64,000 nucleotides of DNA. Origin: Gnetum montanum (Eukaryota; Plantae; Gnetophyta). The stretch is from assembly GCA_015680685.1 (NCBI GenBank), contig MNCI01000563.1:1-64000 (forward strand), in the 5' to 3' direction. Within the stretch, counting starts at the first letter, position 1, and every line of letters starts with the position of its first letter. The notes beneath the pieces are model-generated. The model searched no databases. It was not told where the DNA came from and worked only from the letters and a program-made list of their open reading frames with translations. Position numbers and translations under genes: made by a program. This document shows, in pieces, positions 31,017-54,783 of the stretch.

Positions 31017-34000
31017 ATGATGAAGAAGGTCATATCAATGAGCTAGAATCCAGTATTGGATGAGGTAGGAGAGGTTGTATGAATCGTTTCTAGGCTTCCA
31101 AATCCATCTACAAGAAAATGATCTTCGTTGGTGATTTTCCATTACCAATTTTCCCTCCATTTTCTTTGATTTTTGGCCAAATTATGGAAATTTTTTCCCA
31201 CCTCTAGGTTTTCTCTAGTTGAAATTTGGCATATCAACTGCACTAAATCTAAGATTTAGGCTTTTTGACTATGTTCGGATGAAAATTTGGAATTTTGGAC
31301 AACTATTGACAAAGATTCAAATTTTCTCCCAAACCCATCTGCAACATTGGTACCATATTTTTGTCTATTGTTTTTAAATATCATCATCTTTTCTAGCTTG
31401 TGCATGGATATATTTTTGAGTTCTGACTCATAAAACTATTGTTTGGGGTTTTCTAGCTGTATTGAATGTGGAATCAAATTGTTTGGATTTTTTTATGAAG
31501 ATATGGGTTTTTTCTCAATCCAATGCACAACACTCTATCCTATTTTTCAAGATTTTTGCAATTTTTTCATGGAAAAATTTGAAAGGTTTATGATTCTTTG
31601 ATAACATATGGTCAATGTCCAAGGTTCCTAGGGATGGAAAATTGAGTGTAGAAGGGTTTTAGATGAAGTTTGAATTTCTTAAAAAAAATTTCAGGCTTTT
31701 TATTGCAATCAATTTACTACAAACCAAGGTTTTTTAGCCAAAATTTGAGTAAGAATCGTGCTTTCTTGCACTTGTAAATGCAGTGTTAATGGTAAATTTA
31801 GGTTGTTTTGGCTATGTTCTTTACATCAATGGTCAAAAATAATTTTTAAAAAATTTTCTAAGGTTTTCCCCAACCTTTGGATCTTCATTGGTCAATTTTG
31901 GATTTTGGTTGTAAAGTTTTGGGCTTTTTATGGCAAGTGTTGACAGCATTTGGATGCTTAGGCTTTGATTTTGGTCATTATGGAGTTTTTCCAATTTTGT
32001 GGCCAATGTATGGTACTTTCTAGACCTAGTAGCATAGTGTATGAGGGGCTTTGGGATTTTCCGAAGAATGAATGGTAGTGTATAAGCTCCTGGAGCTACG
32101 AAACCTTGTGATTTTTGTTATTACTTTTTCCAAATTCCCAATGTTTAGGATTGTTGGGATATTTTACTAGTTGTTTGCTGAAAAAATGCATTCACCAAGC
32201 TCCAATGCTATCAATTTTGGCCATATGTTTCTATAGAAAATTAGTATGATGTCAACTATAAACAAAAATGTCAAACTTGGTGCTCCAGAGAAAATATCTT
32301 GTTTTCATGTTCATCAATTGTCAAATTATCAAACTAAGTTTGTATGTGCCAATTTATATGTAAAAGGACTAAATTTTGGTTTACATTCGAATGGTAATTG
32401 TGTTAGTGAGCTTGGTTATTTTTTGAATTTTTTGTTTAATGTCAATGGTGTCATTCTAGATGCCATTTTTTTTTGTACATTTTTGTTTTACTATTCTTGG
32501 AGGTCTAATTGTGGTAATTTTTTGGTTGTTTCTATTTGCAGGGCTCTACTAAAACCAATCTTAGCTATTGTGGAGTTAATGGGCATGTTGTGTTGCACTG
32601 GGATGGCTACCCAATATAGCTTAGCATCCAACATGAATATTGACAAACACACCTGAGTGTGGTTTAGACCCAATGCTAGAGAGTTTCTAATGTATTTTCT
32701 CCAACATTATGGTGTGCTAATGTGGTCACACTTGGCTATGGATGTTGCCACTATAATTATAGAAACTCTTGTGGTAGGGTCCTCTAACCATGTCTTGCAA
32801 TTTATGGTGGATGATCCCAAAACTCAAAGAGAAATAGAGTTCAAAGAAAGCTTGTATTCTATGGATGTTCGACAATTATCACAAATCTAGGAGATGCTAA
32901 TATACTCATAGTATAACACTAACAACACCTTAATGTTGGGTCACAAAATAAACACTCTATTCCACAACCCTCCTAGGATTGTCTACCTACTAGAAGCATA
33001 AGCTTGGTTTTGGTTTCACATTTTTTTGTTTCTTTTTTTCTTCTATTTTTATGGTTATTTATTTTAACTTTTTTCATACTTTAATTTTGCAAGTACAAGA
33101 TGCATAGTGGAGGATTGGTGGCAAATGACCAAACCTTGTTTGTGGTTTGCATGGCTTTGAAGAAGTTTAGGCAAGGAGAGATCATAAAAGTGTAAGTGCT
33201 TAACCAGGTCAATGTAGAGTTTGCTAGGTACCTTATGTAATATTCTTGCATATACCAAAAGTATGTAGCTATGAATCATGCACATGAATTTTGAGCTCTC
33301 CAAGATTTAGGAGAACATGTACAAGTTCAACCCAAGGTTTCAGCTTTACCTAAGCCTACTGAGGAAAATTTGTTTAAACATGGCTAATATTTTTTAGCAT
33401 TTTTTGATTTTTTTATAGTATTTTAAGTTTTTATGGTTTTACTAATTGTATACAATGTAGAAGGCTAATGGACTAACTATGTTATGTTATAGATTCCGTG
33501 TGTGAGTCTACAATCATCGTGATTACTTCAGGTCATTGAAGAGAAGATTCTCCTCAAGTGGGATGAAGTACACATAGCACAAGAATGATTGGTAAACAAG
33601 CTCCTACAAACATCTAATAGAGGCTCACTAATGCAATCTTGTTTAACTTATTCATGCTACCTAGTCCATCCATATTGCAGGCTGAGATGTTGAATGTGAT
33701 TGACTCTTTTGACGAGGGGATAACCAAGTTTGTCACTCATGTCCATGATTTTTCCATTATTTTAAGTGTTAATGAGTCAATGTTTAGCGATCTTTTTGGC
33801 CTACCTTCTAGCGGTTTGAAGGTGGTTGTTACAACAGCGAAGGATGTAAGCCATAGCGAGGAAATGAAAAATTAGCTCAAATCCCCTCGTAATGTAGTGT
33901 TGTCTTTTTGTAAATGTGATGTCGATGAGGCAAATACTACTTATCCTCTTTTCCACTCTCAAGCCTTTACCATGCTACTGTGACAAAAGAGAATTATAGG

Positions 34001-36178
34001 GGTTTAATAGGCTTGGACTATGAAAAATATTTTGATCGATGGCACTAGATTTAATTAGGTTGGCTTTTTTATCACTATTCTAAGGGGTGAAATCCAAAAA
34101 CTCTGTGATAATCTTGATTTCATATACCATGTGCATTATACGTTCTTTGGTACATATCATAGAAGGTTCACAAAGTTCTTGGTGATTAAGAGAGATGGAA
34201 AGTGGGTAGCATGGGATTTATTTTAACTTTTCAAGCCTTGGGCTAAACACATTACCCATGTGATGTGCATCCAAGACCCACCCATGGAGGATGTTAGAGG
34301 GTCGTTGTTTGCTACCACTAAAAATGTTAGTGGTGTATGTGGTTTTTTTTCCTAGCACAAGGATTGAGCCTTGTGCTACACATGGCAATTTAAAAAGGAC
34401 AAAGAGGATTCTCACAGAAGTAGATGACACTACCAGAGAAAAGATGAAGAGGCCACAAGTTGAAGAAAACATTCTAGTTGCTAGACAACCAGCACCTAAG
34501 AAGCTAGCCATCAAGCTTAACAAGGCCAACCAATCTATTGGAGGTATGTATATGTTTTTTATATTGTTATTTTTTCAGTTTTTATATTATTTTGTTTGGT
34601 TATATTTTTCATTATATTTTTGTTGCTAAAACATGTTTACTAATATGTTTTATTTTTACTAACTTTGGCTTATTGTAGGAAGGAAATAGGATTTGGCTGC
34701 CCAAGCTACTGAAAAGGAGGAACAAACACATAAGGAAGAAGAGAAGAGGACATCCAAGGAAGCATTAGATGTCTTGGATTCCATCTTGGATGATATGGCT
34801 TCAGAAGGCAACCCTCCAATGAACTTGTCTCATGATCTTCCTAGTAACTTTTGGTGTCGTTTATACTTTTGTTTCAAATTTTATACATTCTTGTTCTAAA
34901 CTATATTGATTGTTATAGTCATTGCAATGCATAAGCCTCATCCAAAAACATCCACATCCACATTCCACACTAAACCTTAGACAAAGACTCTAGACAAGAT
35001 GGAATTCATGAAAGGAATCATGGATGATATGGTTGACAGATTGCAACAATTGGCTCCTAATGTTGGTAAGAAAAAATAAAATATTTTTGTCTTGCATTTT
35101 TGGTTTTTCTATATTTTCATTTTCATGTTTTATGGATTCATAGTTTTTATGTTTTTAAATATTTTCAATGTTTTTAATGTTTTTATGTTTTGGATGTGTT
35201 TTTATGTGATAGTTTCTAAAGTAAAATGGCATCCCATGTGAGATTTTTAGTTCTTATGGAGATTGTACAAAGGAGCTACAAATTATGTTGCATCTAATGT
35301 AAAAACATTTTGGAACTTCCAATGTTCAAACGAGTTCTTATGGAAATGCATTGTGGCATTGGAGAAGTAAAACAAGGAGTTGGAAAACAAAGTAAGAAAC
35401 CTCAAAGACCATAAGACATTCATAGAAGCCCATGTGATCAATAGGGATTCCTTTTGCACAAAGGAGATCAAGTGCTCTCATTATTGGAATGCTATCCAAA
35501 GGAAAGTTGCTCTAGCTAGGAACAACATGGAGGACATGCAGATGGAGCTATTAGTCTACAAAACTACGGATTGGCAAGATTACCATGCATGGATGTTAGA
35601 ATGGGAAAAGAAGCAAAGGGCTCACAAGCAACCATACAAGGCAAAAAAATAAGAACTATATAAAGTTATGGCACAAGGAGGCTATGAAGCAATAGAAATA
35701 TGTGTTCATGTAGGAAATAGGTGTAGAGAACACCTTTAGCAAGTTCAAGGAATTAGTGGTGGTTGTTGATTCTCCTACTACTTAGATCACTATAGCATTT
35801 GGGAAAACTTCTATGGCTACCTTTTCCCATGCTCCTTCTAAGTTGTCAAATATAGAGAAGGGAGAAATCTTGGTAGCAGTAGATCTAGGAGATATCGATT
35901 GGCCAACATGAGTGAAGAATATATTCTTCATAGGTTGAAGACCAGCCTTCGAAAATTCACACCTAAGAACATCACTCTTGAATATCTTGAGGTTTGCAAG
36001 ATTTTTTTTTTAAGTTTTTTGTTATATTTTTTTGTTTGATATTTTACTTGCTTTTTTTCTATTATGATTGTTTTATGGTTGTATGATTATGTTTATGATG
36101 ACTATGAATGTTCTTTATTTCTTATAGGCCCCAAGTGATGATGTTGATGATAATCCTCCTCCTTCCCCTATGGCTTGA
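31017..36178 (+). pseudogene. Antisense multi-exon gene inside element A (FCP1/NIF-like HAD domain + plant-transposon/PMD-like domain + coiled coil)
   Basis: Exon ~32542-32997: KPILAIVELMGMLC...VWFRPNAREFLMYFLQHYGVLMWSH...YNTNNTLML...HNPP. Later exons align with element B's gene (e.g. MEFMKGIMDDMVDRL, YWNAIQ...MQMELL...DWQDY). T-rich GT/AG introns; start codon tentative. Confidence 0.7.
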
Positions 36179-37634: not shown

Positions 37635-37639
37635 ATGGC

Positions 37640-39178
37640 TGTAACGACGGAAAACGTCAGTCGCTGGAAACTACCAAACGAAAATCCGTGTACACAGTCT
37701 TAACCACAGATCCGTGCGAGGACCGTGCTAGAGAAAACGAATCCGCCGTGCCTTGAACACTCTTGTCGATTAGACAAGGACTTACTCAATCAGTAAATCA
37801 ACAAATATTGCGATAATATATGTATTATATAGATATTCCATGCAACAATTTGATTCGATGAATCATAAAAGGAGTAGAAAACGATGTAAATGAATTGAAA
37901 TAACGACAATGTCAATGTGACAAGGAAGATCAGATTTAAGAAGGATGTGCAATTCCAAGATCTATGTTTTGACTTGAAAGCTGAGAATATTGTATATAAA
38001 GTTCCAATGGCAAACTCCGCTTATCTTGTGCGAAGCATACACAAAATAACAAGAAAAATGTTCAATAGGAGCACAGAACGAAGCTCGGTCTACCTCGTAA
38101 GCCAAAGATGGGATGCAAGGAAGGTCAAGCCTGGATGTCTATCGATCAAATTTTTCTGATCAACAGATCTTGACAACCGCACCAGATGATCTCTCGATCT
38201 CTGATCTGCTCCCTTTTTGCCTTCGGTAGTCTCTACTCAAAACTGCCAATGATCACCAATGGAGAGAACTGTATTTTCACCAAAGGACTGATCGCTCCTG
38301 CTGCCAATGCTCAAGCAAATATCTTCTGTTTCTGCTCAAAAGGTGATAGTTGCCAAAAAATCCCAAGATGATCCTCTCTTTAGATCTTCACCAACTAGAG
38401 TATTTATAGGTTTGATAGTACATGGAGAAGGCACGGTCCTGATGACATGTATTTCAACCTTCAAAATACCATTGACTTGGCAAAATTTATGTTGAAACTG
38501 CTCATGTCACATCACGTCTTTTGGAAAAGGGGGCAAAGTACGCTGTCAACCACTTCTGCTGAAGCCACTTCACGTATTGTGCATGTGGATAGCAGGTGCG
38601 TATATGGTACTGCTTTAGCCAGCTTTAGGCTGTATTACACTCGTTTGTGCTGTGTCACGTGGTAGAGCGTAATAGAGCATGGAAATAGTTGATTCAAGCT
38701 GTTTTACGCTCCTTTACGCCGCAAAGCATAATAGAGCATAAAAAATGGTCAACTTTACAATAAATTACGCTTGCCTACGCTGTGTAGCGTAATGAGCGTA
38801 AAGCGACCAATCTGCAAAAAAGAAGAAATCAATCTGCTGCGCTTCCTTGGACTCTGACTTTGCTTTCCTTGAAGCTTGTTACGCTGCTCTGCGTAACGGA
38901 GCGTAAACTTAGCTCTGAACAAAAGACTTAGTAGAATTGCAATAAGTCTTAAACCTTAAACTTTGTCAAAATTATCGAAGTAAGTTACTTTTTGATATTG
39001 GGCTATGTTAAACAGAGTTACACTGAGCAACACTACACTATGTTGCGTAATGTAGCATAAAGAGAGAGATTCTATTTGCCTCTTTGCCTTATTTTGTTTT
39101 CTAGATTTCTGTCATGAACTTTTTTCCCATATAGTGAATCTTTGCCTTAGGCCGATTTGCAATTTCTATGGTGTTTTA
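37640..39178 (-). repeat. 3' LTR of element B
   Basis: TGTAACGA...GTGTTTTA; highly similar to 53173-54778. Confidence 0.95.
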
Positions 39179-40380
39179 ATGGTCCCTCTTTGTTGATGTT
39201 TAGAGGGCTTGCCCGAAAGATGTTGACAAAGAATACGAAACACCGGATGAGTAAAAGTACCAACAACATTCATCAATGGTTACTCAGGTGTTGCCTTGTC
39301 ATTGGAGAAGTGCAGAAATGAGGGAAACAAAAGATAAAAGGGTATGGGAAGGAATTCTTATAGAAGTAAGAGGAAAAAGGTTCGGGGAAGACTCAAATGA
39401 GGTTCGGGGAAGACGCAAATGAGTGAGTATAGTTTTTTCACGTATAAGCACTTAGGATTTCTCCTGCGATTGTGTTTGCATGGAGTTATGTCATCATTTT
39501 GTAGATGAAGGGGCTTGCATAGATGAATTGTGTTGTGTCTGTGTAGCCTGGATGAGTTGTGTTTCATCCATTTTGCCGACCCACTTTTTTTTTTACGTCC
39601 ATTAGGTGAGTTGCATTACGTCGATTTATGGACTTGATTGTAATGCCAATGCAGAAAGCGTATATTGCGTATTCACATTTTGCGTAAGGGAAACAGATGG
39701 TGGAAATGCAGGGAAGTAATAGCTAGAGGTAGGATTATGAGGAAAACAGGGATGCACTCCTAAGTGGACAGGCTAACCTAAGCGGCCATCTCAAAATGCT
39801 GTCTGTATTTCACCGCTCAAATGAATGCACCTTTGAACAACATCCTAGTAGTAAGTGACCTGTAACCAAAGAAGAAAATAGAGGACACCATTGCTCGGTC
39901 AAATCACTAGAGAGGTTGTTGAAACAAGTACTGTTTGGGGCAAGACAGAGTGAGTGGGTCATGAAGGAGGAACTGTAGCACAAGACTAGAGTCTTCAACA
40001 TTGATGCTCGGCCCAGCATATCACTGCCAAAGAATATCAAGCTCATCGCACCCGACTGGTTATGCAAAGAACCAGCTAGGTGAATCTATGAAGCTAGAGC
40101 CTGATAGTGATGATGAGTGGAGATCCCCAAGGTTGTGGTTGATGAAAACTCCTTTGGAGCTCCAAGTGGCGAAACTAACCTCTCAAAGGTGCCACTGCTG
40201 GAATGAGTGTAGTGACAGCATCTCCGAGGGGTTAGTAGTATGCCTTTCAGTACATCCGAGGAATCAGTAGAATGCCTGTGAGGTAGTGATGCTGGGGTTG
40301 TCCCAACGTCCCACCCCATTTGTTTTGTAGCTGCACAGAGATGATTACACTCGCTTGGTTTGCATGTTGGCGGCCTGTAA

Positions 40381-41003
40381 GTCCTAGTTTTAAGTCCTGG
40401 TAGACTGTCATTGCTGGTTTTAAGTCTCAGCAGACCATGGTCCCAGTTTAAAGTCTGGGCGGAGTGAAAAAGTGCTAGTTTTACGTCATAGCAGATGGTG
40501 GTAGAACTAATTTATGGTCTCAGCAGACCGTGCTATGGATGTCAGTTTCATGTCATGACCCAGGGATAGATCTGTGCTGGTTTCTCGTCTCAGCAGACGG
40601 ATACTTACCTATGCCATTTTTATGTCCTGGTGGGCAGCCGGTGCCAGTTTAGCGTCGTGGTAGACGCGTGCAAGAAATACTAGTTTTACGTCTTGGCGGA
40701 CCTGTACAACACTGCCATTTTTACGTCATAGCAGACGATTGCAACTTGCTAGTTTTACGTCGTGGCGGACGATTGTTACCAGTTTAGCATCGTGGCAGAA
40801 GCGTGCAAGAAGTGCCAGTTTTACGTCATAGCGGACGATCAGTGCTAGTTTAGTGTCATGGAGGATGTATGAGGAGAGTGCTAGTTTAGCATCGTAGTGG
40901 ACGATTGTTGCTAGTTTAGCGTCGTAGCGGATGGTTGTTGCCAGTTTAGCATCGTAGCAGACGATTGTTGCCAATTTAGCGTCGTAGTGGATGATTGTTG
41001 CCA
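40381..41003. repeat. 30-37-bp tandem array downstream of integrase
   Basis: Units such as CCAGTTTAGCATCGTAGCAGACGATTGTTG; regular at the right end, degenerate leftward. Confidence 0.9.
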
Positions 41004-41059
41004 TGCCTGATGTTAACACTGGATATGTAGCTAAATGTAGTACTACTTCAGATATATAT

Positions 41060-43991
41060 GATTCACAGGATTGGGTAACTCATTGTCGTTCATATCTGCT
41101 AGCTTGAATGCACCGTTTCCATACACATTCGCTACCAAGAAAGGGCCCTCCCAGTTTGCAGAGAACTCGCCTACTAGTTTGCAAATGGCCGTGAGAACCA
41201 AATCTCCCTTCTTGATCGAACGTTGTTGAAGGTTATGACGGTGCTTCTACCTCTGCTTATCTTGATACTTTTCGATGGTATTAAGCGTCTATATTCACTT
41301 CTCCTCTATTGAATCCAAATCCATGATTCGAGACTCGGTGTGTTGAGCCTCATTTATAATCATAGAGAGGACCATTCGTAGAGAAGGAACTTGTAATTCG
41401 AGGGGCTGCACAGCCTCGGATCCATAGACTAGGCTATAGGGTGTACTTTCTATAGCTATTCTGCATGTGGTACGATACACCCATAGCACATAGAGGATCT
41501 TTTCATGCCCCCATCTCTTGTTGCTGTCAAGCATTTTCTTGAGTAAGTTGATAATGACCTTGTTTGTTGCTTTAGCTTGACCATTCGCTTGCAAGTAATA
41601 AGGTGAGGAAAAAGATTGTTTGATACCAAGTTTGTTGCAAAAGGATTTGGTTTCCAGACTACTAAATTGTGGCCCATTGTCCATCATGATAGTCATCGGG
41701 AGACCAAATCTAGTTACAATGTTATCTAGAATGAACTGACAGATCTGTTGGGATGTGATCTTTCGCAGAGGAATGGCTTCCACCCACTTCATGAAATACT
41801 CAGTGGCGGTGATTATGAAGCTATGACCTATGGAAGATTTCAGTGTGATAGGCCCTATAATGTCTAATCCCCATCGTTGAAAGGGCCATGTTATTTGAGT
41901 CATGTGTAGTTCTGTAGGCGACACGTGTATAAGGTTCACGTAATGTTGACACGTGTCGCACGTTTTAACCTTTGTAAGACAGTCTTTTTCCATGTACGGC
42001 CAATAATACCTTAAGCAACAGATTTTAGAGGCCATGGCCCGTGGTGCTATGTGTCCTCCGCATAATCCCTCGTGGACTTCATCGACTATACATTGCGCTT
42101 GATCTTTGTTAATGCAAGTAAGCAGTACTCCATCAAAAGAGCGTCTATAGAGGGTACTATCTCCTATGATGACGTACTGCCTAGCTCGCTTGCGAATTGC
42201 ATCTTTCTGCACACGTTTTAGTTCGTGCGTTTTAGTTTGTCGCCATGCAAGAGGTAATTTTTAATGTTGTCGTACCACTCTGGCATTCTATCCTCGAGCA
42301 GTGAAGATATTTGCACCGCCTGAATGATAGGGTCTGTACAATCTATTATTAAGGTGGGACAAGTGTTAAACAAGTGCAATGGCATGTTTAAAGCTAATGT
42401 AACCAGTGCATCGGCTAGTGTGTTATCGTTTCGGGGCATGTGTTGGGCATCGATCGTTGTGAACCGCTTCAGAAGATCTTTAGCCATATNNNNNNNNNNN
42501 NNNNNNNNNNNNNNNNNNNNNNNNNNNNNNNNNNNNNNNNNNNNNNNNNNNNNNNNNNNNNNNNNNNNNNNNNNNNNNNNNNNNNNNNNNNNNNNNNNNN
42601 NNNNNNNNNNNNNNNNNNNNNNNNNNNNNNNNNNNNNNNNNNNNNNNNNNNNNNNNNNNNNNNNNNNNNNNNNNNNNNNNNNNNNNNNNNNNNNNNNNNN
42701 NNNNNNNNNNNNNNNNNNNNNNNNNNNNNNNNNNNNNNNNNNNNNNNNNNNNNNNNNNNNNNNNNNNNNNNNNNNNNNNNNNNNNNNNNNNNNNNNNNNN
42801 NNNNNNNNNNNNNNNNNNNNNNNNNNNNNNNNNNNNNNNNNNNNNNNNNNNNNNNNNNNNNNNNNNNNNNNNNNNNNNNNNNNNNNNNNNNNNNNNNNNN
42901 NNNNNNNNNNNNNNNNNNNNNNNNNNNNNNNNNNNNNNNNNNNNNNNNNNNNNNNNNNNNNNNNNNNNNNNNNNNNNNNNNNNNNNNNNNNNNNNNNNNN
43001 NNNNNNNNNNNNNNNNNNNNNNNNNNNNNNNNNNNNNNNNNNNNNNNNNNNNNNNNNNNNNNNNNNNNNNNNNNNNNNNNNNNNNNNNNNNNNNNNNNNN
43101 NNNNNNNNNNNNNNNNNNNNNNNNNNNNNNNNNNNNNNNNNNNNNNNNNNNNNNNNNNNNNNNNNNNNNNNNNNNNNNNNNNNNNNNNNNNNNNNNNNNN
43201 NNNNNNNNNNNNNNNNNNNNNNNNNNNNNNNNNNNNNNNNNNNNNNNNNNNNNNNNNNNNNNNNNNNNNNNNNNNNNNNNNNNNNNNNNNNNNNNNNNNN
43301 NNNNNNNNNNNNNNNNNNNNNNNNNNNNNNNNNNCCATCCATGAAGGATAAAAGCACATGCCCAGTGGTTGTATCCACTAGTTGGTCGATACTCGGTAAT
43401 GGAAAATTATCCTTGATTGTAGCTTTGTTCAAGTCTCGGAAGTCTATGCAGATGCGTATCTCTCCGGTCTTTTTAGGAACAACTACAATGTTAGATACCC
43501 AGTCTGAGTAATCAACCGCACGAATAAAACCAGCCTGGTACAGTTTAGTGATCTCATCACGTACTGCTAGCATGACTTTTGGCTTAATTTTTTGTGCTTT
43601 TTGTCTAACTGCTTTGATATGGGGATCTAGAATTATGTTGTGTTGTATTAATCTTGGGTCTAGTCCCGGCATATCTTCGTATGACCATGCAAACACCGTG
43701 ATATTATTCTGGAGGATCTGTTTTATGTTGTCATGTGCCATTTTGTCTAGTAAAGAACTAACCTTTATGCGTAACCACAGAGACCTCATTAAGGAGGTCT
43801 TCAATTACATCTCCAGCTTCCAGATCTAGCGTGCGCGTCAATTGTTCTGGCCAGTCTTGAGATGTTTTCGACGTGGCTATGGTTGCGTCATCGAGGGAAA
43901 GGTTAGTTTCTACTAGCGTGAGATCAAATTTTCTAATGATTTCCCCTTGGGGGCTTGTTAAAACTAGGAGCGCAGGTAAAGTTTTGTCCAT
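41060..43991 (-). pseudogene. Element B pol: RT (partly in gap), aRH end, integrase
   Basis: FAWSYEDMPGLDP...CIDFRDLNKA...FPLPSIDQL; HMPRNDNTLADAL; 305-aa integrase ORF 41295-42212 (HxxxH..CxxC, WGLDIIGP, DNGPQF, NGQAKATNK); NWEGPF at ~41150; N gap 42490-43334. Confidence 0.95.
42490..43334. other. assembly gap
   Basis: run of N within element B pol. Confidence 1.
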
Positions 43992-44489
43992 TTAGCAATT
44001 GTCCTGCAAAATTGTCAAATATGAAAGTAATTAGAAAAATGCTAAGTTGGATGTGATAAACATTTAGCGTATAGCACTTCTTTTAGTCTAAAAGGAAAAA
44101 GGATGTGATGTGACGTTGCTGAGCATCGGAACCTGACTAAATTTTGAACATTGTGAACAGCCTGTAATTAATGTGACCTGATTACGAGGAGATAAGATGC
44201 AATAGTTTAAGGTCATTTCAGACTGTAATGCATGCGATATCTACCACAATTAATGCCTTGATTTTCGATTTCCAGCTCATACTGGCACCAGCATTTGGGC
44301 AAGTCTTGCTTTAATCGGGCATCAAGTCAGTTAGTTTTGCATATAAGTAGGCAGTTCGCATCGAAAACAGTCTGTTGGCTATCACAAATTTGAATTCTTG
44401 GCTGTCACCGAGAGAAGGAAAAAGAGCAAAAGACTACAGCATGTTATTTGTGAAGGTATTCAGGTGTGAAGGTGTTCAGGACTGCAACA

Positions 44490-47400
44490 ATGGCGCCGAA
44501 AGTTAGAGGAAAGAATACCAAGTTGGCTAAAATTAACGAAGTACAAGGGAGCCTGCAGCGTGCTTCGCAGGCCTTGGTCGAAGTGAGGGATGTCACTCCC
44601 TTGAATCGATAGGCCATCTCTTATTTACTCGTATTGATTCTTCTAATACGCTCTTTTTTTGTGTTTATTCTTTTTGCGTCCTCTGCGTAAACTAGAGTTT
44701 TATGCTGTAGACCTCGTATTGAAGCGAGGGTTTAGACGACAGTATTGCATCTATCATCGTTGTCTGAGACAGACCTTGTACTATTACAAAGGTTTCAGCA
44801 ATTTTGGTTGTATGGCTAGAGCGTAATTTTATAAATTTTCCTATAGTTTAAGCATGCAATCAGAATCTAGATGGTAACGTGTTTATTTTCTGTACAGTAT
44901 CATGGTGAAACCCGTCCTAATCGTTCTGGATATAGTCGGGGTTTTATGTTGTATAAACCCTATCGTACCCAATGTTCCTCCCCCTCAGACTTGGTTGCAG
45001 GGGAAGGCTATATGGTTCTAAAAGGGTGCGCTGGAGTTTCTACATTTTTGCTATGTAACTATAGTATTATCGTGTGGTCGCATCTGTCGGGCGATGTGGC
45101 TGGCACTATTTTGAAACATCTGTTAGTGGGTTCTACGTAGGACATCCTGGCTTTCTTGACAGATGGGGCTATTAACACTGGGCATCCCCAGGACCGCGAA
45201 CTTAGTGCTAGAGGATTCAGGTGTTTAAGTTGGATCTAGGAGATGCCCATATTTAGCTGCTATCATGCATATAATACTTTGTTCGTGGCTCGTCATGTTT
45301 CAACTTACTTTCAGAATCCTCCAGGCACGGTGTATTATTTAGGCAAGTAAGTTGTTTTACTGGCGGTATTGTCAATATGCTTCTAATGTCTGAATTTGCA
45401 AACTGTAGAAAAGTAATGTGTTATATGATACAGGTTTTTCATCAACGAGAATGGGTTAGTAGGCAATGGTGATACATTGTCTTGGACCGAAATGGCAATA
45501 AAGGAGTTTATGTCTACCAGCAACGTACGCGCCAGTGTAATGGGACAGACGGCCTTCAACATTCATGAGTATCCCACCCATTATGCTGATTCCTTCAAAA
45601 ATTGTCAGAATTTCGGGTGGTTACATAAAGAATGGACTTTGAACCCACCCCTTACCCTCGTGGACGTGCAAAGGAAGCTCCCTCCATTTCCTTTGCCATT
45701 TGGACCAGGTAAGGTTTTGTTGCTGCTATTAGTTACAGGGTATTATATTTTTTTGGTTTTGAAATGTTGCATAACAGTGTTTTCGCTATGTTGATATGTT
45801 CCATGTATTATCAGTCAGGGAATCCCAAGAGATTACCATCACTAATTCTGGCCGCGAGGCGAACACCCTCCTTTTCTGCTATGGCTACATAAAGGAGGTA
45901 CAACGCTGGCTTGGCCACGTAGTGGCCCCAGTTGCGTTGGTCGCCAAGCTGCGGGAAGCAAGGCTGATGCATTTATTTCTGGTCGTAACCCCTGATGTCC
46001 CCGCAAGCGAAATGTTGACCCTAGTTAACTCCTTCAGCGAGGGAGCTGAACGTTTTTGCACACGCGTGCGTCACATGCTTGTAAAGTTTGATATCGACGC
46101 TCAGCTATTCACTAACCTCTTTGGCGTCCCCTCTGACGATCTTCCCATAGAGGAAAAATCAGGGGAGAAGCATCAAATGTTAAAAAGAGTTGGAGGAGTG
46201 GTTGGGGATGAAGAAGGAGGCCAAGGGGATCCCTTGTGAAAAGATTGAATTAGAGGTTGCCAAGACTATTTATCCCCTCTTCCGAGCCCAAGCCTTCCCC
46301 AAAACACTCTCGCAGGGGAGGTTCTTTACTATAGAATAGGCCCGTATTATGTGAGAGGTGATGGAGGAGGGGACCCAATTTGACTGGGCAAGCTATTTCG
46401 CTAAGGGGTTATGCATTGAAATGGTGAGACTCCGTCAAAAGCTCGAGTCGCGTTTCAGTGTGCACTTCGCCTTCTTCATAGCTTGCCTCCAGCGTTTTGC
46501 CAAATTTTTGGTTATCTAGAGGAATGGGGTCTGGGTCCTACAAGACCGAGACCAGTTATCCAAACCTTGGATTTCTCATATCTTCAGCACTACTCAGGCA
46601 CAGGATCCTCCAGAGGGAATTGGGGAGTCACTATCTATAACGACTAGGGATTTGGTGGCATCTCAAATGTGGGGCCCTGACAGTGTAGCTGGGGCACTTC
46701 CCACTTACACTGGTGATGCATCATGGGGAAAGCGCATGGCTACAGAGATAGTAGACGCCTTGGTTCAGCGTAAAATACCTTGCTTAACCGAGGCCCCTAT
46801 GGAACTAGCAGGTGGCACGGGCAGAACTGTGCAAGTCAGAGTCCAGTGGAGTAAACCTCCACCTGGTAAGCATAAATACATAGTGAAAGTTATGGAAATT
46901 ATTGTATTATGCAACTTTATTCAAGGTATTCTAAATCGTTTAAATGTGTTATGTGGCATGAACAGGGAGACCTATAGAACGGTTGACCCTTGAAACATGG
47001 GCAGTGGTATTACGGCATGGGGAAGGGGCCCCAGTTTTGGAAGAGGAGGCCCCAACTGTTAGAATAAGTGATGCACAAACTCTTGTGCGTGAGGAGAGAG
47101 AGGAGGCGAAAAAAGTTGACACACTCCCCACTGTAATAGGTAGAGGTAATCAGTGTATTAGAATTTTTTGTTTGGAATTCTGTTAATAACTAGAAATTTT
47201 GACTTAATTACGCTATAGATGAACAAGGTGCATCCCCGTCCGTCATTGTCAGCAGAGTGTGGGGGGAATTCCCTGATAAGTTTGCCTTCATGGAAGACAT
47301 TGTCAGTGACATGATCGAGTGCCTCGAGCACGTGGATCCTGGTGCTGGTATGTTACTGCTATTGTACGCTTATTTTATTATAAGGTTATGATGTTTATTT

Positions 47401-48552
47401 ACATTTGATAATATTTGTTATCAGGAGCTCGCCTTCGATGGGACCCCACAGAGCCCATTGACCTAGACACAGTCGAGCCCTCATCGGATGGTACGGTCGT
47501 GCCATGCAACATTTATGAGGAAATGCGTAAATGTGCGTTATGCTCGACTCACTCCTTGTGGGAGAGTTAAAACGTCAATGAAGACCTCTAGAAGAAGCTG
47601 CAAAGGTCAGAGAAAGAAAGGATGTCTCTGACCAAAGAGGTTGGAGACTTAAAATTGCGATGTGAATTCCTGCAGGTGTGAGGAATGGATGAAGAGGACT
47701 GGTAGACGGCTGTTATCAACTAAGCTTGCTACTGGACCGCAGTCAGAAATAGTGTTCAAACCAGTCAAGAATTGGTGGAGCAAAGGATGCAAATAGAACT
47801 CTTGGCCCAAAAGAACCAGGACTGGAAGGATTTTTGCACAAGCGTCCAAGAGTGGGGGTAGAAAGAAAAGGATCACAAGCATCTGTATAAGCGAGAAAGT
47901 CTCACTTATCGTCAACACTATCGAGATTCTGACATTCAAGCTCAATCCTTGTGGGTGTTCCTCGATGTCATAGGTGCATCTAAGGCCTTCGAGAAGTTCC
48001 AAGAGCAGGTGACGGTAAGCGCGTCCCTAGAAAGGGAAATTACTCTTCCCGGGGAAGAGACTACAGTACCTACTTTCTTCCCTGAACCACCCCGATGGAC
48101 TAGCATGGAGAAAGGGAAAGTGAAGTTTGGAGCTATTCTGGGGGATGGAGTATGGTTAGAGTTAATCAAAGACGAAATCATGCAACTCCTGTGGGTCAGT
48201 TTAGACCAACTCCCCTTTGCTGCAGATGTAGGACCATCGTGAGTAAGTTTGAATTTTATTGAGTTTAAATTTTCTGATTTGTTTTATCATGGTTTTTGCT
48301 TATGTATATTGTATGTAGGTACAAGAAGTGGATGAAGGAGGTGAACAGGATGAGGAGCGTGTTCAGGAAGAAGAGCGTAATGAAGCAAACCGTACTCTTG
48401 GGAAGCCTGTGTTAGTGCAAGAACCTCGTGAAGATGACATTCCTCACGAAGGAATACTCTCCAAAAAGGATGGCCCACTCCAGGATGATTTTTTAGGGTT
48501 AGAGGCAGACTTAAGGGATACTGGTGACAGTGGTACTAGGGGGGATGTGTAA
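44490..48552 (+). pseudogene. Antisense multi-exon gene inside element B (FCP1/NIF-like HAD domain + plant-transposon/PMD-like domain + coiled coil/acidic tail)
   Basis: Exons 44898-45346, 45434-45708, 45815-46865, 46966-47145, 47219-47347, 47425-48242, 48319-48552 with GT..AG introns that all preserve frame; tentative first exon from ATG 44490 (MAPKVRGK), TATA-like ATATAAG at ~44341; a few stops and frameshifts. Confidence 0.8.
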
Positions 48553-49114
48553 TTGTGATTTACGCATAATTTTATTGATGAAATTTGAACAATGGTAATA
48601 TGAATGTTGGTGAGATTACTCATGAGATTTTTCTTATGGCTTTTATTTAATTTTATGTCTTTATTTATACAAAGCATAAACAGGATGGAATTAAAGACTT
48701 TGGATAGGTTGCGTTATTATGACTGTAGAATGGAGTATCTAGTTTAAGGCCATTGCGGGCCGTCACATAGCATTTTCATAAGATATAAATAGAATGAACT
48801 TGCTATTTTTAGGCCATTATGGGCCTTTATTTATTTTTAGACCATTGCGGGCCACCGCTAGTTTTAGGCCATTGCGGGCCATTTGCGTACGTCTGGGAGT
48901 GTAATTAATAAAAATGTACATATCTGCGTAATTGTGCTAATATGACTAGTAGAAGTCAAGAAGCGTAAATAGCATAAAATGGAGAATGTAAATAGCATAA
49001 TTGATAGAAATCGTAAATACATTTATGTATATTAAAGAAAACTAACAATCAAATTCGATAAGTGTAAGCAAAAAACTAGTAAAAGTGTAACGATGCGCGT
49101 AAATACCACTCAGA

Positions 49115-52100
49115 TCAATCACTAGCCCACAGTTGTTTCTTAATGGCTTTTACGTTCAGCGATGCGTAAGGACGAGGAGGTTTATGGCCTGACTCTTCTA
49201 TATCATCCTCTCCTCCCTGAAATGGTAAGTTGGCCCAGGCTAGGCTGTCATCATCGATTTTAACTTGTTCGGAGACTTGGACATGGGTTTGGTCTTCAGG
49301 CATCTCGATCTCCAAACCCCGTTCTTCTTTGATGTTATTGATAGTCCTAGAAGTTATTTCATCACCGTGTATTACTACCTCTCTCCCTGTGTAAGGGAGG
49401 TGTATCTCTTGGTGTATTGGTGATGAAATTGCCCTCAGTTGGGCCAGCCAGTACCTCCCTAGAATCAGGTTGAAATCGGGCATCTCCTCGACAACAAGAA
49501 ATGTAGCCTTTATTGGGAATTGATCCCCTGCCACAAATTCAATATGCACCATTCCCTTGACTTGAACTCGTGCCCCATTGAACGACTTTAGGCACGATGT
49601 CATTGTAGGACTGATCTGGTCGACCAGGCCCAACTTATCCACTATAGGATAAGGGATGACATTCGCAGCCGCGCCATCGTCACCGTGCACCCTCTGAATC
49701 CGATATTGACCAACCTAGATGGTGATGAACATGGGTTCTATCATCACTTGACCTTTCTCGGGATCATCTTTGATGGATTTATCATGAAAGGTCAGAGGGG
49801 TTGGTTTAGGTTGCTCAGTGGCGGGAGGAAGTATAACAACATGTATCACTTCTTCTTCCGCTGGTAAGCTTTCATCCATAGGTATGGATGTCAACATACG
49901 AACCATAGCCTCACGATGCTTTTGAGATGTCATAAGAAATTCATAGAGGCTCAGCATTTTGTTCTTCTATTTCAAAGCCTACTTGACTTGCGTAAATGCG
50001 TTGAGGAGGTCCCGTTCTAGGCTGGATTGGTTATCTCCTCTGTCTTCTTCCATTCGTCCTAAGAGACGAATCTCCCGAGGCGGAACAACATCAGTCGGAG
50101 GATTGTGTTTCTTCCTGTCAAGGGGAGGTGGTTGTATTTCTGTACCCTTGCCTTGCCCATAAGGTGCAGGCACAGGGATAGAGGCCAGGGGCCTGGGCTT
50201 AGCGAAGCCTAGCGTAGATTTGTTTTTGGTGGCATTGATTGATGCATCTCCTTCCTTTTTTTTATTTGGTGGCAGTTGGTGGTTTTGGTTAGAAGCTTTC
50301 CCCTACGTAAAAGGGGAAACTGGTGGTCTTGGTACCCTAAGGATAAAAGTTACCTTAGGAGTGGGTGCGCACATGGCCGTGGCTTTATCGCTAACGTGAG
50401 ATCAAGTTATGGTTGGAGAGGGCACCTGAATAACAAAGGGTGGCCTCGAGATGCCGGTAATCGTCAATGAAGAACTTGTCCCCTGGGGTGAGTTGGTAGG
50501 TACGTGTAAAACGAAGGGTTGTTTAGGCAGTACCTTCCCTTCACTGTCTGTACTTACCACGTTGATTGTGTACGGTGCGTTATTTGCATTTAACGAGTCT
50601 TTATACACATCCAACGCCTGGTTTTTGGGACGTGTTGGACTACTACCGTCTAGTTTAAGATAACCATCATCAATCATGCGTTGAATGTCATCCTTCAACA
50701 CCCAACAGTAATCGGTATCATGACCACACAACTGATGGTAGTCACAAAAGCAGTCCAGCCTAAAAGATTTCGGAACTAGTGGTTCGTTAGGTAGGGCTAA
50801 AGAAGGATTCTTCAGCAATTCACAATGACACCTGTGACGCTGGAGAGCTTCTTCGGATACCTTTTTATTCTGAATGTATCCTGACCCTAATAATTGTTTC
50901 AACAGTTCCGAATGTTTTATAGGCAGGGCTGTGTATTTTGAGCGATCTTTACACTTGAAGTTTGGCCTTGGCTGGGGGGCTTTTCAGGGGTGGGTGTGTC
51001 CTAACTGGTGCTTCTTGCACTAGCCTCGGTCTCAGCAGATGCTATGGGTGCCTTCTTGTTATTCTTGTTTTTAGCGCCCTCAGCTAGCGTAGCTACTGTC
51101 TTTGTTGTTGCTTTACCCTTGTCTTTACCCTTATTATTGACGTTTTTATAGGCCACGTACGCTGGGTCTTTACTAGCCTCAACAGCATCCTAGATGCTCT
51201 TAGTTTGGGCGAAAGCCTAACTCAAGGAGCTAGGGGCAAGGTAATACAGTTTAGACTTGATGAAGTCCTTAACTGCTCCTTTGAAAATAGCCAGCAGATG
51301 GGCTTCCGCGATAGGTTCATGGATTTCATTCAAGGTAGCACTCCATCACTGTATAAACCTCTGGACTAGTTCAAGTGGATCCTGCTTCACTCCCATAAGT
51401 TGGTCTAGTGTGACTTTTGGCTTTAAATTGTACTTAAAGCGAGTCACGAATTGTGTTAGGAGTTCTTCCAGGGTTGAGATGGAATAGCGAGGAAGCGCTC
51501 GATACCAGTCCAAAGCTTTCCCTGCCAGAGACATTACAAAGACATGGATAATTGTATGAGGCCATTGCTGCAATAACAAGGATTCAGACCTAAAGGTAAC
51601 AAGGTGAGCGTTAGGATCTCCTTCCCTATTATATTTAGTAAAATGGGGCAACGACATCCCTAGAGGCAATGATAGCATTGGAACCACTAGGCTGATAGGA
51701 TCATCCTGGTAGAAATCCATGATTTGTATCGTATCAGAGCCAGCAGCTTTAAGGTGCTTAACTTCCTCAGTGAGGGTCTGAATAAGAAAAAAGGCTTGAT
51801 CCAGACTTGGCGATGAAGAATTTTGTGCAAGAGGAGCAAGGGGTTGGACTGAAAGGGTAGTGCCAGGCAATGGGAATGAAGCGATGGTTTGGCTGACAGG
51901 TGGTGCAATAGAGACTGTCCCCGCAGATGGAGCTACCTATGGAAGCCACCACCCATTAGGTTGAGTAGAGAGATTGGTTGTCACCAGGTGTGTAGGATGG
52001 AGATTGTAAGGGTATTGTAGGTTTATTTGTGGGACATGCATGGTAGGTGCGTCTAAGGGTTGTGCACCGTATAATGCAGATTGATTATGTAAGATAGACG

Positions 52101-52923
52101 GGATCCACTGACCAGCCATGGGTCGTTGAATGGATTGCTGTAATTGAACAGTGGTTGTGATCTGTTGTCTTGCAATGGGTTGCACCGGATTTTGCACCGG
52201 GCGGGTTATAGGTGTGGTATGAGGTTGCACGTGGGGAATAAAATGAGGTGCGGTAGACGCAGGTACCACCGACAGAATACTGATTACACATGATGACGAG
52301 ACTACCCCCATGTTATTTTGAGATGTTATTTGTACTTGTAGGACTGAGGATTGCGTAGTGACCTGCAGGACGACAGGAATATGAGTTTGTGTAGTCATGA
52401 CTAAGTTGAGATGGGAGGCTTCTCCGGTGAGAGGAAATAGGAAATTTATGTATGTATGGGGGCTGAGAGTATGATCTGAATTCATGTGTTCAGATTGGGC
52501 TATGAATTCATCTTCTTCCTCTTCCCCGTTTTGAGGTTCTAGAAGGGACCGTGTAGTCTGACTCCTAGCCATAACCAGCTGGGTCAGGAGTTCATGATAA
52601 TGTTTGGTCAGGGGGATAATGTCATAGGCGGTAGGGGTGAAATCTTGGCCCCCTTTGTGGATTACCTCAAAATTTTGTTTTGCCTCAATCTTAGCTCAGC
52701 TAAGAGCAAGCTTTGCCTGAATCTTGACGCAAATGAAATTGTACTCTTCCAGAGTCATGGCGGTGAATATAGGATCCTTGCCCTATAACCTCAATGAACG
52801 ATGCGATGGCCCCTGAGGTCCTATTGCACCAGAAGCTGGTCCGGTGGTGGTGATGGGATTTATGGATGTGGCACCTGAGTTGGTGGTGATCATAGCAGCA
52901 GTGGTTGCATATGTAGAATCCAT
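49115..52923 (-). pseudogene. Element B gag-protease
   Basis: ATG at 52923; gag FTKYNREGDPNAHL...ALDWYRALP; zinc knuckle CDYHQLCGHDTDYC; protease HGDDGAAANVIP...FNLILGRYWL. Confidence 0.9.
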
Positions 52924-53132
52924 TTTTCAAAGAGGTTAATGACAACAAATGACAGGATCTAAAAGGTGATAGCCAAACAGAATTATGAATGGGCTTTTTG
53001 CCCTGTAGGATTCCAAAGGAATCATTGCTGTGACCAATCTACACCACACGATTTCATAAACTTCCTTAGAGGTATTACGTTTACATTTTTATAGGCGTGG
53101 GTATGGATCGCTTACAGGGCTACCCGTAAAGT

Positions 53133-53166
53133 ACAGATCGGAGGTTCAGCCCTCCTTCTAGCGCCA
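53133..53166 (-). promoter_or_regulatory. PBS of element B, tRNA-Asn(GTT) type
   Basis: Minus strand TGGCGCTAGAAGGAGGG; plus strand TCGGAGGTTCAGCCCTCCTTCTAGCGCCA resembles the plant tRNA-Asn 3' end as recalled. Confidence 0.8.
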
Positions 53167-53172
53167 AAAAAT

Positions 53173-54778
53173 TGTAACGATGGAAAACATCGATCGCTGG
53201 AAACTACCAAATGAAAATCTTTGTACACAGTCTTAACCACGGATCCGTGCAAGGGCTATGCTGGAGAAAACGAATCCGCGGTGCCCTGAACACTCTTGTC
53301 GATCAGACAGGGACTTACTTAATCAGTAAATCGATGAATATTGCGATAATATATGTATTATATAGATATTCCGTGCAACAATTTGATTTGATGAATCGTA
53401 AAAGGAGTAGAAAACGATGTAAATGAATTGAAATAACGACAATGTCAACGTGACAAGGAAGATCAGATTTAAGAAGGATGCGCAATTCCAAGATCTATGT
53501 TTTGACTTGAAAGCTGAGAATATTGTATATAAAGTTCCAATGGCAAACTCTGCTTATCTTGTGCGAAGCATACACAAAATAACAAGAAAACTGTTCAACA
53601 GAAGCACAGAATGAAGCTTGGTCTACCTCGTAAGCCAAAGATGGGATGTAAGGAAGGTCAAGCCTGGATGTCTATCGATCAACTATTTCTGATCAATAGA
53701 TCTTGACAACCGCACCAGACGATCTCTCGATCTCTAATCTGCTCCCTTTTTGCCTACGGTAGTCTCTGCTCAAAACTGCCAATGATCGCTAATGGAGAGA
53801 ACTGTATTTTCACCAAAGGATTGATCACTCCTGCTGCCAATGCTCAAGCAAATGTCTTCTGTTTCTGCTCAAAAGGTGATAGTTGCCAAAAAAGCCCAAG
53901 ATGATCCTCTCTTTAGATCTTCGCCAACTGGAGTATTTATAGAATCGGTAGTACATGGAGAAGGCATGGTCCTGATGACACGTGTCTCAACCTTCAAAAT
54001 ATCGTTGACTTGGAAAAATTTATGTTGAAACTGGTCATGTTGCATCACATCTTTTGGAAAAGGGGGCAAAGTACGCTGTCAACCACTTCCACTGAAGCTG
54101 CTTCATGATTATGCACAATACGCTCATCAACATATTGTGCGTGTGGATAGCAGGTGCGTATCTGGTACTGCTTTAGCTGGCTTTAGGCTGTATTACGCTC
54201 ATTTACGCTGCATCACGTGGTAGAGCGTAATAGAGCATGGAAGTAGTTGATTCAAGCTGTTTTATGCTCCTTTACGATGCAAAGCGCAATAGAGCGTAAA
54301 AAATGATCAACTTTACAATAAATTACGCTTGCCTACACTATGTAGTGTAATGAGTGTAAAGCGATCAATCTACAAAAAAGAAGAAATCAATCTGCTGCGC
54401 TTCCTTGGACTCTGAATTTGCTTTCCTTGAAGCTCGTTATGCTGCTCTGTGTAACAGAGCTTAAACTCAACCCTGAACAAAAGACTTAGCAGAATATGCG
54501 ATAAGCCTTAAACCTTAAACTTCATCAAAATTGCCGAAGTAAGTTACTTTCTTATATCGGGCTATGTTAAATAGAGCTACGCTGAGTGACACTACGCTAT
54601 GTTGCGTAATGTAGAGTAAAGAGAGAAAACAAAGTAAGGTGGAAATTTGTAAGAGACTTGGAGACTTGATGCTATGCGCCTCTTTGCCTTGTTTTGTTTT
54701 CTGGATTTCTGTTGCGAACTTTTCGCCCGTATCGTGAATCTTCACCTTAGGCCGATTCACAATTTCTACGGTGTTTCA
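53173..54778 (-). repeat. 5' LTR of element B
   Basis: TGTAACGA...GTGTTTCA, adjacent to the PBS; two small insertions relative to the 3' LTR (~54107-54133, ~54627-54670). Confidence 0.95.
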
Positions 54779-54783
54779 ATGGC

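What the first reader, a model, noticed from the sequence alone, without database searches (positions are those of the whole stretch)
44898..45708. Retrotransposon-encoded FCP1/NIF-like (CTD-phosphatase-type HAD) domain
Seen: hand translation of two spliced plus-strand exons in element B, repairing one 1-nt deletion in a T-run at ~45047, gives KPVLIVLDIVGVLCC...KAIWF*KGALEFLHFLLCNYSIIVWSH...FRCLSWI*EMPIFSCYHAYNTLFVARHVSTYFQNPPGTVYYL...GLVGNGDTLSW...SNVRASVMGQ. Knowledge: plant FCP1-homology/NIF proteins follow the order KLLVLDLNGLL...VFKRP..xxFLxFCFxxFxVGVWSS...KELxKLW...YNESNTLLLDDSPYKAxxNPPxTAIF...SLGxGGDLRxYL...NVQxYV...FGQ (recalled consensus). All of these blocks appear in the same order with similar spacing. 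Inference: a Tat-lineage LTR retrotransposon has adopted a host phosphatase-fold domain as a stable accessory module. I do not know this as a described cargo of plant gypsy elements. The ORF track misses it because of splicing and decay.
Basis: partly seen in the sequence, partly recalled or inferred. Interest (0 to 1): 0.92.

Follow-up and report, generated by a model that had tools for sequence, protein, structure and literature searches.

The report
Retrotransposon's decayed antisense phosphatase-like gene
An old 17-kb plant Tat-type LTR retrotransposon carries, backwards between its protease and reverse transcriptase, the broken remains of an intron-containing accessory gene whose first two exons look like a CTD-phosphatase (NIF/FCP1, HAD) domain without the catalytic residues; the plant-transposon papers I read do not describe such a passenger.

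Summary
Window 44898-45346 and 45434-45708 (+) are two exons split by an 87-nt GT-AG intron. This copy is broken by three stops and one frameshift. It lies inside element B (37640-54778, minus strand, 5-bp target duplication, LTRs 91% alike), between a protease-like ORF and RT, antisense to them.

Element A, into which B is nested, has the same exon in the same place. The exons are 36% identical over 143 residues with two one-residue gaps (z = 20 against shuffles), yet share no detectable DNA similarity.

Three methods point to NIF, all below curated thresholds:
- Pfam's top hit for A's 77-residue core is PF03031 NIF (E 0.019).
- NCBIfam's top hit is HAD-IIID TIGR02245 (E 0.0022).
- All 30 nearest ESM-Atlas clusters are NIF (top score 0.95).

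PDB searches, a 1.84-billion-protein phmmer run and a fragment AlphaFold model added nothing.

By inspection, both copies lack the second Asp of DxDxT and the acidic motif IV, so a pseudophosphatase is likely.

DNA contigs show the family is highly repeated. RNA reads were too few to show splicing. Host origin is untested.

The scan has flagged this gene repeatedly elsewhere in this genome. I rate it a new variant of the known Tat "extra ORF" theme.

The parts
44898..45346 (+). Exon 1 of the NIF/HAD-IIID-like domain (about 149 codons). Broken by stops at 45019-21, 45138-40 and 45237-39 and by a frame change in the T-run 45045-49.
   Evidence: Homologous to element A 32542-32998 (z = 20). Family assignment rests on A's core piece.
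45347..45433 (+). 87-nt GT..AG intron within the domain-coding region
   Evidence: GTAAGT donor and pyrimidine-rich ...ACAG acceptor read directly. The reading frame continues across it. Not confirmed by RNA.
45434..45708 (+). Exon 2, the C-terminal end of the domain plus a linker; unbroken in this copy
   Evidence: Short local match to element A 33085-33192. GTAAGG donor at 45709.
45946..48155 (+). Further conserved coding blocks of the same antisense gene, domains unknown: 45946-46149, 46241-46309, 46394-46546, 46556-46654, 47628-47891, 48039-48155
   Evidence: Collinear tblastn matches to element A 33621-35902, E down to 7e-14. No Pfam family. Atlas uninformative.
49118..49714 (-). Protease-like ORF of element B
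   Evidence: Retropepsin-like motifs read by eye; no Pfam hit. Homologous to element A 37339-36956.
43335..43804 (-). N-terminal part of RT. The rest is hidden by the N-run 42490-43334.
   Evidence: 54-78% identical to element A 28576-28147. RT motifs read by eye. No Pfam hit on this fragment.
42221..42487 (-). C-terminal end of an RVT_3-type (archaeal-like) RNase H, the Tat-clade hallmark
   Evidence: PF13456 E 5.9e-4, 20.2 bits (cut-off 21.6). Same in element A 26672-26848, E 3.9e-3.
41298..42260 (-). Integrase
   Evidence: PF00665 E 3.9e-14 and PF17921 E 2e-9. Best database relatives are 45-48% identical plant proteins.
51349..51936 (-). gag
   Evidence: PF03732 E 1e-4, 22.7-23 bits against a 24.1 cut-off. 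58% identical to element A 55500-55042.
37640..39178 (-). 3' LTR of element B (TG...TA); target-site duplication ATGGC at 37635-37639
53173..54778 (-). 5' LTR of element B (TG...CA); target-site duplication ATGGC at 54779-54783
   Evidence: LTR identity is 91.1%, and 117 of 137 mismatches are transitions.
32542..32998 (+). Homologous NIF-like exon 1 in element A, also decayed. It begins after an acceptor at the same position and phase as in B.
   Evidence: Its piece 32657-32887 gives the NIF, HAD-IIID and Atlas hits.

Best explanation
The stretch is the first two exons of a dead copy of an accessory gene that belongs to a family of plant Tat-clade Ty3/gypsy LTR retrotransposons. The gene lies on the strand opposite gag-pol, in the roughly 5-kb spacer between the gag-protease part and RT-RNase H-integrase.

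Its N-terminal 150-170 residues are a diverged NIF/FCP1-type (HAD subfamily IIID) domain. That domain keeps the hydrophobic core and the motif II serine. It lacks the second Asp of DxDxT and the acidic motif IV, so it most likely bound a target rather than hydrolysed it (a pseudophosphatase).

Inferred, not shown:
- Because the gene is antisense, its introns are not removed from the sense-strand genomic RNA that is reverse-transcribed. An intron-containing gene can therefore be carried from copy to copy.
- The spacer holding it probably acts as an Ogre-like intron of the sense transcript.
- The protein would have been made from its own antisense transcript and would have acted on a phosphoprotein step of transcription or silencing.

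This copy has three stops and one frameshift in the domain exons and LTRs 9% diverged, so it does nothing now.
For: Structure of the element:
- The same order, gag-PR-[antisense gene]-RT-INT, is seen in the nested pair A and B.

Coding constraint on the plus strand:
- Eleven collinear plus/plus protein blocks match between A and B, with E down to 7e-14.
- The minus-strand control gave only four weak shadow hits, best 4e-4.
- Exon 1 aligns at z = 20, with codon-position differences 0.55/0.35/0.69 and no DNA similarity.
- The acceptor before exon 1 has the same position and phase in both elements.

Family assignment, on A's core piece:
- Pfam top hit is PF03031 NIF, E 0.019, residues 3-39 to profile positions 39-75 of 160.
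- NCBIfam top hit is TIGR02245 HAD-IIID, E 0.0022, residues 3-54 to positions 46-98 of 195.
- ESM Atlas gives NIF for all 30 nearest clusters, top score 0.95, 209 of 256 shared features. The neighbouring ORF, a negative control, gave nothing.
- The family was named before any tool was run. Per family, the chance probability is therefore about 1e-6 to 1e-7.

Copy number: 31,553 contig pieces of DNA run X1 lie on 43750-49700, and the domain exons have summed depths of the same order as the RT and PR flanks.
Against: - All HMM scores are below curated cut-offs, and only one piece, from element A and not B, hits at all. Other short pieces gave unrelated chance hits at E 0.01-0.1.
- There was no hit in PDB, with either a single sequence or a two-row profile.
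- No hit at E <= 0.001 came from phmmer against 1.84 billion representatives or from the word-indexed search.
- The AlphaFold single-sequence model of the 77-residue piece is two long helices (pTM 0.39), not a HAD fragment.
- RNA runs gave 37-118 reads, mostly under 90% identical, with no splice joints.
- Motif assignments outside the HMM-aligned core rest on my recollection of the HAD/NIF motif order.
Confidence: 0.78

Rival explanations
1. The antisense accessory gene is real and conserved, but its likeness to NIF/HAD is spurious and the domain has some other, unknown fold.
For: Scores are sub-threshold. PDB gave no hit. The fragment model is all-helical. Nothing was found among 1.84 billion representatives.
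Against: Three methods, two HMM libraries and a language-model search, each put the pre-named family first. By my recollection of the profile, the spacing from the motif I position to the HMM-aligned 'RP..FL' block (31 residues) and on to the motif IV position fits a 160-position NIF profile. The Atlas gives nothing for the neighbouring ORF.
Confidence: 0.12
2. Uninterrupted members of the family encode a catalytically active CTD-type phosphatase, and the missing catalytic residues here are decay of these two copies.
For: Element B keeps the first Asp (L-D-I-V-G) and both copies keep the motif II serine. Both copies are clearly decayed.
Against: Two copies only 36% identical in this exon both have a hydrophobic residue plus Gly where D-x-T should be. 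Both also have non-acidic residues at the motif IV position. The loss therefore probably predates their split.
Confidence: 0.07
3. The plus-strand coding stretch is a host-gene fragment or an unrelated nested insertion peculiar to this copy, not part of the retrotransposon family.
For: It lies on the opposite strand and splits gag-PR from RT by about 5 kb. DNA-contig joints 44221 to 48740 hint at copies without it, but only 22 nt match on the shorter side of the joint.
Against: The diverged element A has the same arrangement, order and orientation. The stretch lies within the LTR/TSD-bounded element. It is covered by many diverged contigs.
Confidence: 0.03

Closest known systems
Extra ORFs (eORFs) of Tat-clade LTR retrotransposons: PMD, PMD-coiled coil and Tr28-coiled coil proteins (Ustyantsev 2015, PMC4408406; Neumann 2019, PMC6317226; Vicient 2020 and 2025, PMC7264820 and PMC11963269)
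   Same: A lineage-stable accessory gene in a Tat element, often antisense to gag-pol, function unknown, thought to be regulatory.
   Different: Described eORFs lie after pol (antisense) or before gag (sense) and carry PMD or Transposase_28. This one lies between PR and RT and has GT-AG introns. It starts with a NIF/HAD-IIID-like domain. No PMD or Tr28 hit was found here.
Ogre elements (Tat lineage IV): gag-PR separated from pol by a spliced intron (cited in PMC4408406)
   Same: gag-PR and RT-RH-INT are separate blocks, with aRH next to integrase. An acceptor-like TTTTGCAG lies just before the RT frame.
   Different: The spacer here is about 5 kb and holds a whole antisense gene. Sense-strand splicing is not shown; no RNA joints were seen.
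NIF/FCP1/SCP small CTD phosphatases (PF03031; HAD subfamily IIID, TIGR02245/02250/02251)
   Same: Top profile and language-model hits. The block order runs from a hydrophobic strand with Asp, to 'RP..FL', to a hydrophobic strand with Ser, to a hydrophobic strand followed by 'NPP'.
   Different: DxDxT is reduced to D-I-V-G in B and E-L-M-G in A. The acidic motif IV is absent. Scores are below family thresholds. The domain is encoded inside a retrotransposon.

Membership tests
NIF / FCP1-like phosphatase domain (PF03031, HAD-IIID) | Profile match at or above the curated threshold | tested here: inconclusive
   PF03031 is the top hit but scores 15.1 bits against a 21.8 cut-off, E 0.019, on a 77-residue fragment. 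TIGR02245 is the top NCBIfam hit at 17.6 bits, E 0.0022. Pieces of element B alone give no hit. Exons were searched piece by piece and were not joined or mended.
NIF / FCP1-like phosphatase domain (PF03031, HAD-IIID) | Motif I DxDx(T/V), the nucleophile and general acid | tested here: not met
   By inspection of the aligned exons, B has L-D-I-V-G and A has V-E-L-M-G. The position is assigned from recalled motif order and spacing, not from an HMM alignment.
NIF / FCP1-like phosphatase domain (PF03031, HAD-IIID) | Motif II Ser/Thr at the end of a hydrophobic strand | tested here: met
   W-S-H-L is invariant in A and B. It lies inside the HMM-aligned stretch.
NIF / FCP1-like phosphatase domain (PF03031, HAD-IIID) | Motif IV acidic pair (DD / DxxxD) for Mg2+ | tested here: not met
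   At the expected place B has F-V-A-R-H and A has M-L-G-H-K. The position is assigned from recalled motif order.
NIF / FCP1-like phosphatase domain (PF03031, HAD-IIID) | Rossmann-like HAD fold | tested here: inconclusive
   The single-sequence AlphaFold model of the 77-residue piece is two helices with pTM 0.39, so no fold search was run on it. All 30 ESM-Atlas feature neighbours are NIF.
Tat clade of Ty3/gypsy LTR retrotransposons | LTRs with TG..CA ends, a 5-bp target duplication, and the order gag-PR-RT-RH-INT | tested here: met
   PR and the RT start were recognised only by motifs and by A/B homology.
Tat clade of Ty3/gypsy LTR retrotransposons | Additional archaeal-type RNase H (aRH, RVT_3) | tested here: inconclusive
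   PF13456 C-terminal end lies just before the integrase in B (20.2 bits, cut-off 21.6) and in A (17.5 bits). The rest is hidden by an N-run. Many integrase relatives carry PF13456+rve.
Ogre-type organisation | Spliced sense-strand intron between gag-PR and pol | tested here: inconclusive
   Donor-like and acceptor-like sites are visible. No RNA joints were seen in three RNA runs, at very low depth.
PMD (PF10536) / Transposase_28 (PF04195) eORF proteins | Profile match to PMD or Tr28 in the accessory protein | tested here: not met
   No such hit at E <= 1-10 for nine downstream stop-free pieces in A and B. The Atlas is uninformative.

The most novel reading that the evidence does not exclude
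A large family of plant Tat retrotransposons maintains an intron-containing antisense gene for a NIF/FCP1-derived pseudophosphatase. The protein would bind a phosphorylated host target, such as the Pol II CTD or a substrate of CPL-type phosphatases in small-RNA or silencing pathways. It would thereby tune the element's own transcription or blunt silencing. That would be a transposon-encoded counterpart of retroviral accessory proteins.
Probability: 0.15. Interest if true: 0.85.

Novelty: new variant of a known kind. Interest (0 to 1): 0.58.

Why it matters
Extra genes in Tat/Ogre/Retand elements are widespread, but their functions are unknown. Those described so far are PMD or Transposase_28 proteins placed before gag or after pol. 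This one is different in three ways: its domain points to phosphoprotein or CTD biology, it has introns, and it sits in the gag-PR/pol spacer. That gives a concrete biochemical hypothesis, binding of phospho-targets, for how such passengers might serve the element. It also illustrates how antisense orientation lets a retroelement carry an intron-containing gene. In this window the gene is a fossil.

Tried and rejected
- Pfam and NCBIfam on every stop-free piece of B gave no family hit. They gave only unrelated chance hits such as DUF1107 and CYNS_N at E 0.01-0.03.
- My first Pfam call used the wrong frame for the N-terminal piece; one search corrected this.
- phmmer of A's 77-residue core against 1.84 billion representatives gave 0 hits at E <= 0.001.
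- The word-indexed search on the core piece found no candidates. On the downstream ORF, 8 candidates were found and none scored.
- PDB by sequence gave 0 hits. A two-row profile gave only a chance NPC1-related hit at E 3.4.
- The AlphaFold model of the fragment is an all-helix artefact, so I did not send it to fold search.
- A three-row alignment misplaced the second B piece, so I dropped it.
- The Atlas on the downstream ORF gave no family.
- The PMD/Tr28 idea for the downstream part found no support.
Linkage in other genomes could therefore not be tested.
- RNA reads showed no splice joints. The loose ends at 44889 are simply the unspliced upstream sequence of a diverged copy.
- I rejected the nested foreign insertion and single-copy host-gene capture readings.

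Full report
**What is in the sequence.** On the plus strand an exon starts at 44898, directly after TTTATTTTCTGTACAG, and runs to 45346. A GTAAGT donor follows. An 87-nt intron ends in ...GATACAG at 45433. A second exon runs from 45434 to 45708 and is followed by GTAAGG. In this copy exon 1 is broken by in-frame stops at 45019-21, 45138-40 and 45237-39 and by a one-base frame change in the T-run 45045-49. Exon 2 is open.

**Where it lies.**
- Direct repeats 37640-39178 and 53173-54778 are LTRs with TG..CA ends. They are 91.1% identical, and 117 of 137 mismatches are transitions.
- They are flanked by a 5-bp duplication, ATGGC.
- Between them, on the minus strand, lie gag (PF03732, just under threshold) and a protease-like ORF at 49714-49118, recognised by motifs only.
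- Next come the start of RT (43804-43335, with the rest hidden by an N-run) and the end of an RVT_3-type RNase H (E 5.9e-4).
- Last comes the integrase (PF00665 E 3.9e-14).
- The RVT_3 end next to the integrase supports the Tat clade. So does the frequent PF13456+rve architecture of the closest database integrases, which are 45-48% identical and come from Malus, Cryptomeria, Dendrobium, Vitis, Taxus and Ginkgo.
- This reading follows the definitions in PMC6317226 and PMC4408406.

The finding therefore sits antisense in the roughly 5-kb spacer between PR and RT of element B, a 17,139-bp element.

**A second, diverged copy.** Element B is inserted into another element, A.
- A's pre-PR/PR is at 37594-36956 and its gag at 55500-55042.
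- A's RT is at 28576-28147 and its integrase at 26554-25647.
- A's pol DNA is only 65-67% identical to B's.
- Translated plus-strand segments of A match B in eleven collinear plus/plus blocks, A 32546-35902 against B 44902-48155, with E down to 7e-14.
- The same number of minus-strand segments gave only four weak shadow hits, best 4e-4.
- blastn at word size 7 finds no DNA similarity there.

With breaks shown as X and exons kept apart, exon 1 of A and B align over their whole length. Identity is 52 of 143 with two single-residue gaps, z = 20 against 500 shuffles. Differences per codon position are 0.55, 0.35 and 0.69. That alignment is protein-guided, so the contrast is somewhat inflated. The acceptor in front of exon 1 is at the same position and phase in both elements. 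The gene is therefore an inherited, once-constrained part of the element family. It is not a local capture.

- The longest core piece is A 32657-32887 (77 aa). In Pfam its top hit is PF03031 NIF: E 0.019, 15.1 bits, residues 3-39 on profile positions 39-75 of 160.
- In NCBIfam its top hit is TIGR02245, a HAD-IIID hydrolase: E 0.0022, residues 3-54 on positions 46-98 of 195.
- In the ESM Atlas all 30 nearest clusters are NIF, with top score 0.95, 209 of 256 shared features and recognition 3458.
- The neighbouring downstream ORF, treated the same way, gave nothing.

Taken alone, E-values of about 0.01 are not remarkable. Other short pieces produced unrelated hits at that level. But the family was named before any search, so the per-family probability is about 1e-6 to 1e-7, and three methods agree.

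Negative results:
- PDB gave no NIF hit.
- Nothing appeared among 1.84 billion representative proteins at E <= 0.001, nor in the word-indexed search.
- The single-sequence AlphaFold model is a helical artefact.
- B's own pieces hit nothing. B's assignment rests on its homology to A.

I put the NIF/HAD-IIID homology at about 0.8-0.85.

**Catalytic state.** By inspection, using the HAD motif order as I recall it, motif I is L-D-I-V-G in B and V-E-L-M-G in A, where DxDxT is expected. The motif II serine (W-S-H-L) is conserved. The motif IV position holds F-V-A-R-H in B and M-L-G-H-K in A instead of an acidic pair. Two copies this far apart share these losses, so the ancestral protein was probably already a pseudophosphatase. 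This is an inference.

**Copies and expression.** In DNA run X1, 31,553 contig pieces at 85% identity or more lie on 43750-49700. The domain exons show summed depths of the same order as the RT and PR flanks. The tool warns that depth is not copy number. Three oligo-dT RNA runs of the same species gave only 118, 37 and 47 reads. Most were under 90% identical, they lay on both strands, and none showed a splice joint. Antisense transcription and splicing are therefore untested, not refuted. Joints 44221 to 48740 in five DNA contigs might mark copies lacking the whole gene. However, they match on only 22 nt on the shorter side, next to a repeated CCTTAAACTA-like motif, so I leave them open.

**How it most likely works.**
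- Shown: the gene's position, its orientation, its exon-intron signals and its conservation.
- Inferred: the sense genomic RNA carries the antisense introns unspliced, which allows an intron-containing passenger to be copied.
- Inferred: the spacer acts as an Ogre-like intron of the sense mRNA. A donor-like GT sits just before the PR stop, and TTTTGCAG just before the RT frame.
- Inferred: the protein, made from an internal antisense promoter, bound a phosphorylated target.

This copy is dead.

**Comparison with what is known.** Reviews and surveys of plant LTR-retrotransposon extra ORFs describe PMD, PMD-coiled coil, Tr28, Smc-like and ENV-like products. These lie before gag or after pol, and Ogre has its intron between gag-PR and pol. 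None of these papers mentions a NIF/HAD domain or an antisense gene in the PR-RT spacer. Full-text searches for such a combination found nothing relevant. Downstream blocks gave no PMD or Tr28 hit, so I do not endorse the 'PMD-like' reading in earlier notes. The scan itself has noted the same gene many times elsewhere in this genome, and two follow-ups reached a similar reading.

**Limits.** Host origin was not tested.

Noticed in passing
window 37635-54783: Element B (17,139 bp, target duplication ATGGC) is nested inside element A, between A's gag (55500-55042) and pre-PR/PR (37594-36956). LTR divergence is K ~0.094, with 85% of mismatches being transitions.
   Followed up: yes
window 45237-45239 and 32888-32890: Elements A and B carry an in-frame stop at the same aligned column of the NIF-like exon ('LS.I*EM'). 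This could be parallel decay at a mutable codon or a shared feature.
   Followed up: no
window 48740-48890: Several copies of a ~20-nt motif (GGCCCGCAATGGCCTAAAA-like) lie between the end of the antisense gene and PR. DNA contigs of run X1 show many length variants here, with joints skipping 71-103 nt or going back 39-48 nt.
   Followed up: partly
window 44221 / 48740: Five DNA contigs join about 44221 to about 48740, skipping about 4.5 kb, which is the whole antisense gene. Only 22 nt match on the shorter side of the joint. These may be gene-less copies or a repeat artefact.
   Followed up: no
window 40747-41003: A tandem array (30/60/66-nt periods, about 4 copies) lies between integrase and the 3' LTR, as is common in Tat/Retand elements. 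It gives a repetitive 'YDAKLATIV' minus-strand ORF.
   Followed up: partly
window 23316-24305, 57049-57766, 62192-63080: Three ~80%-alike LTR-like repeats. The first two probably bound element A. The third may be a solo LTR or another element.
   Followed up: no
window 29000-32500: Element A has about 2.9 kb more than B between RT and the NIF-like exon. This stretch includes short internal repeats at 29048-29567 and may be a secondary insertion.
   Followed up: no
window 992-1351 (+): A weak integrase-like match (25% identity to B's integrase, E 1e-4) suggests a third, unrelated retroelement remnant at the window start.
   Followed up: no
window 42490-43334, 10312-10677, 16122-16577: Runs of N. 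The first hides most of RT and RNase H in element B.
   Followed up: no
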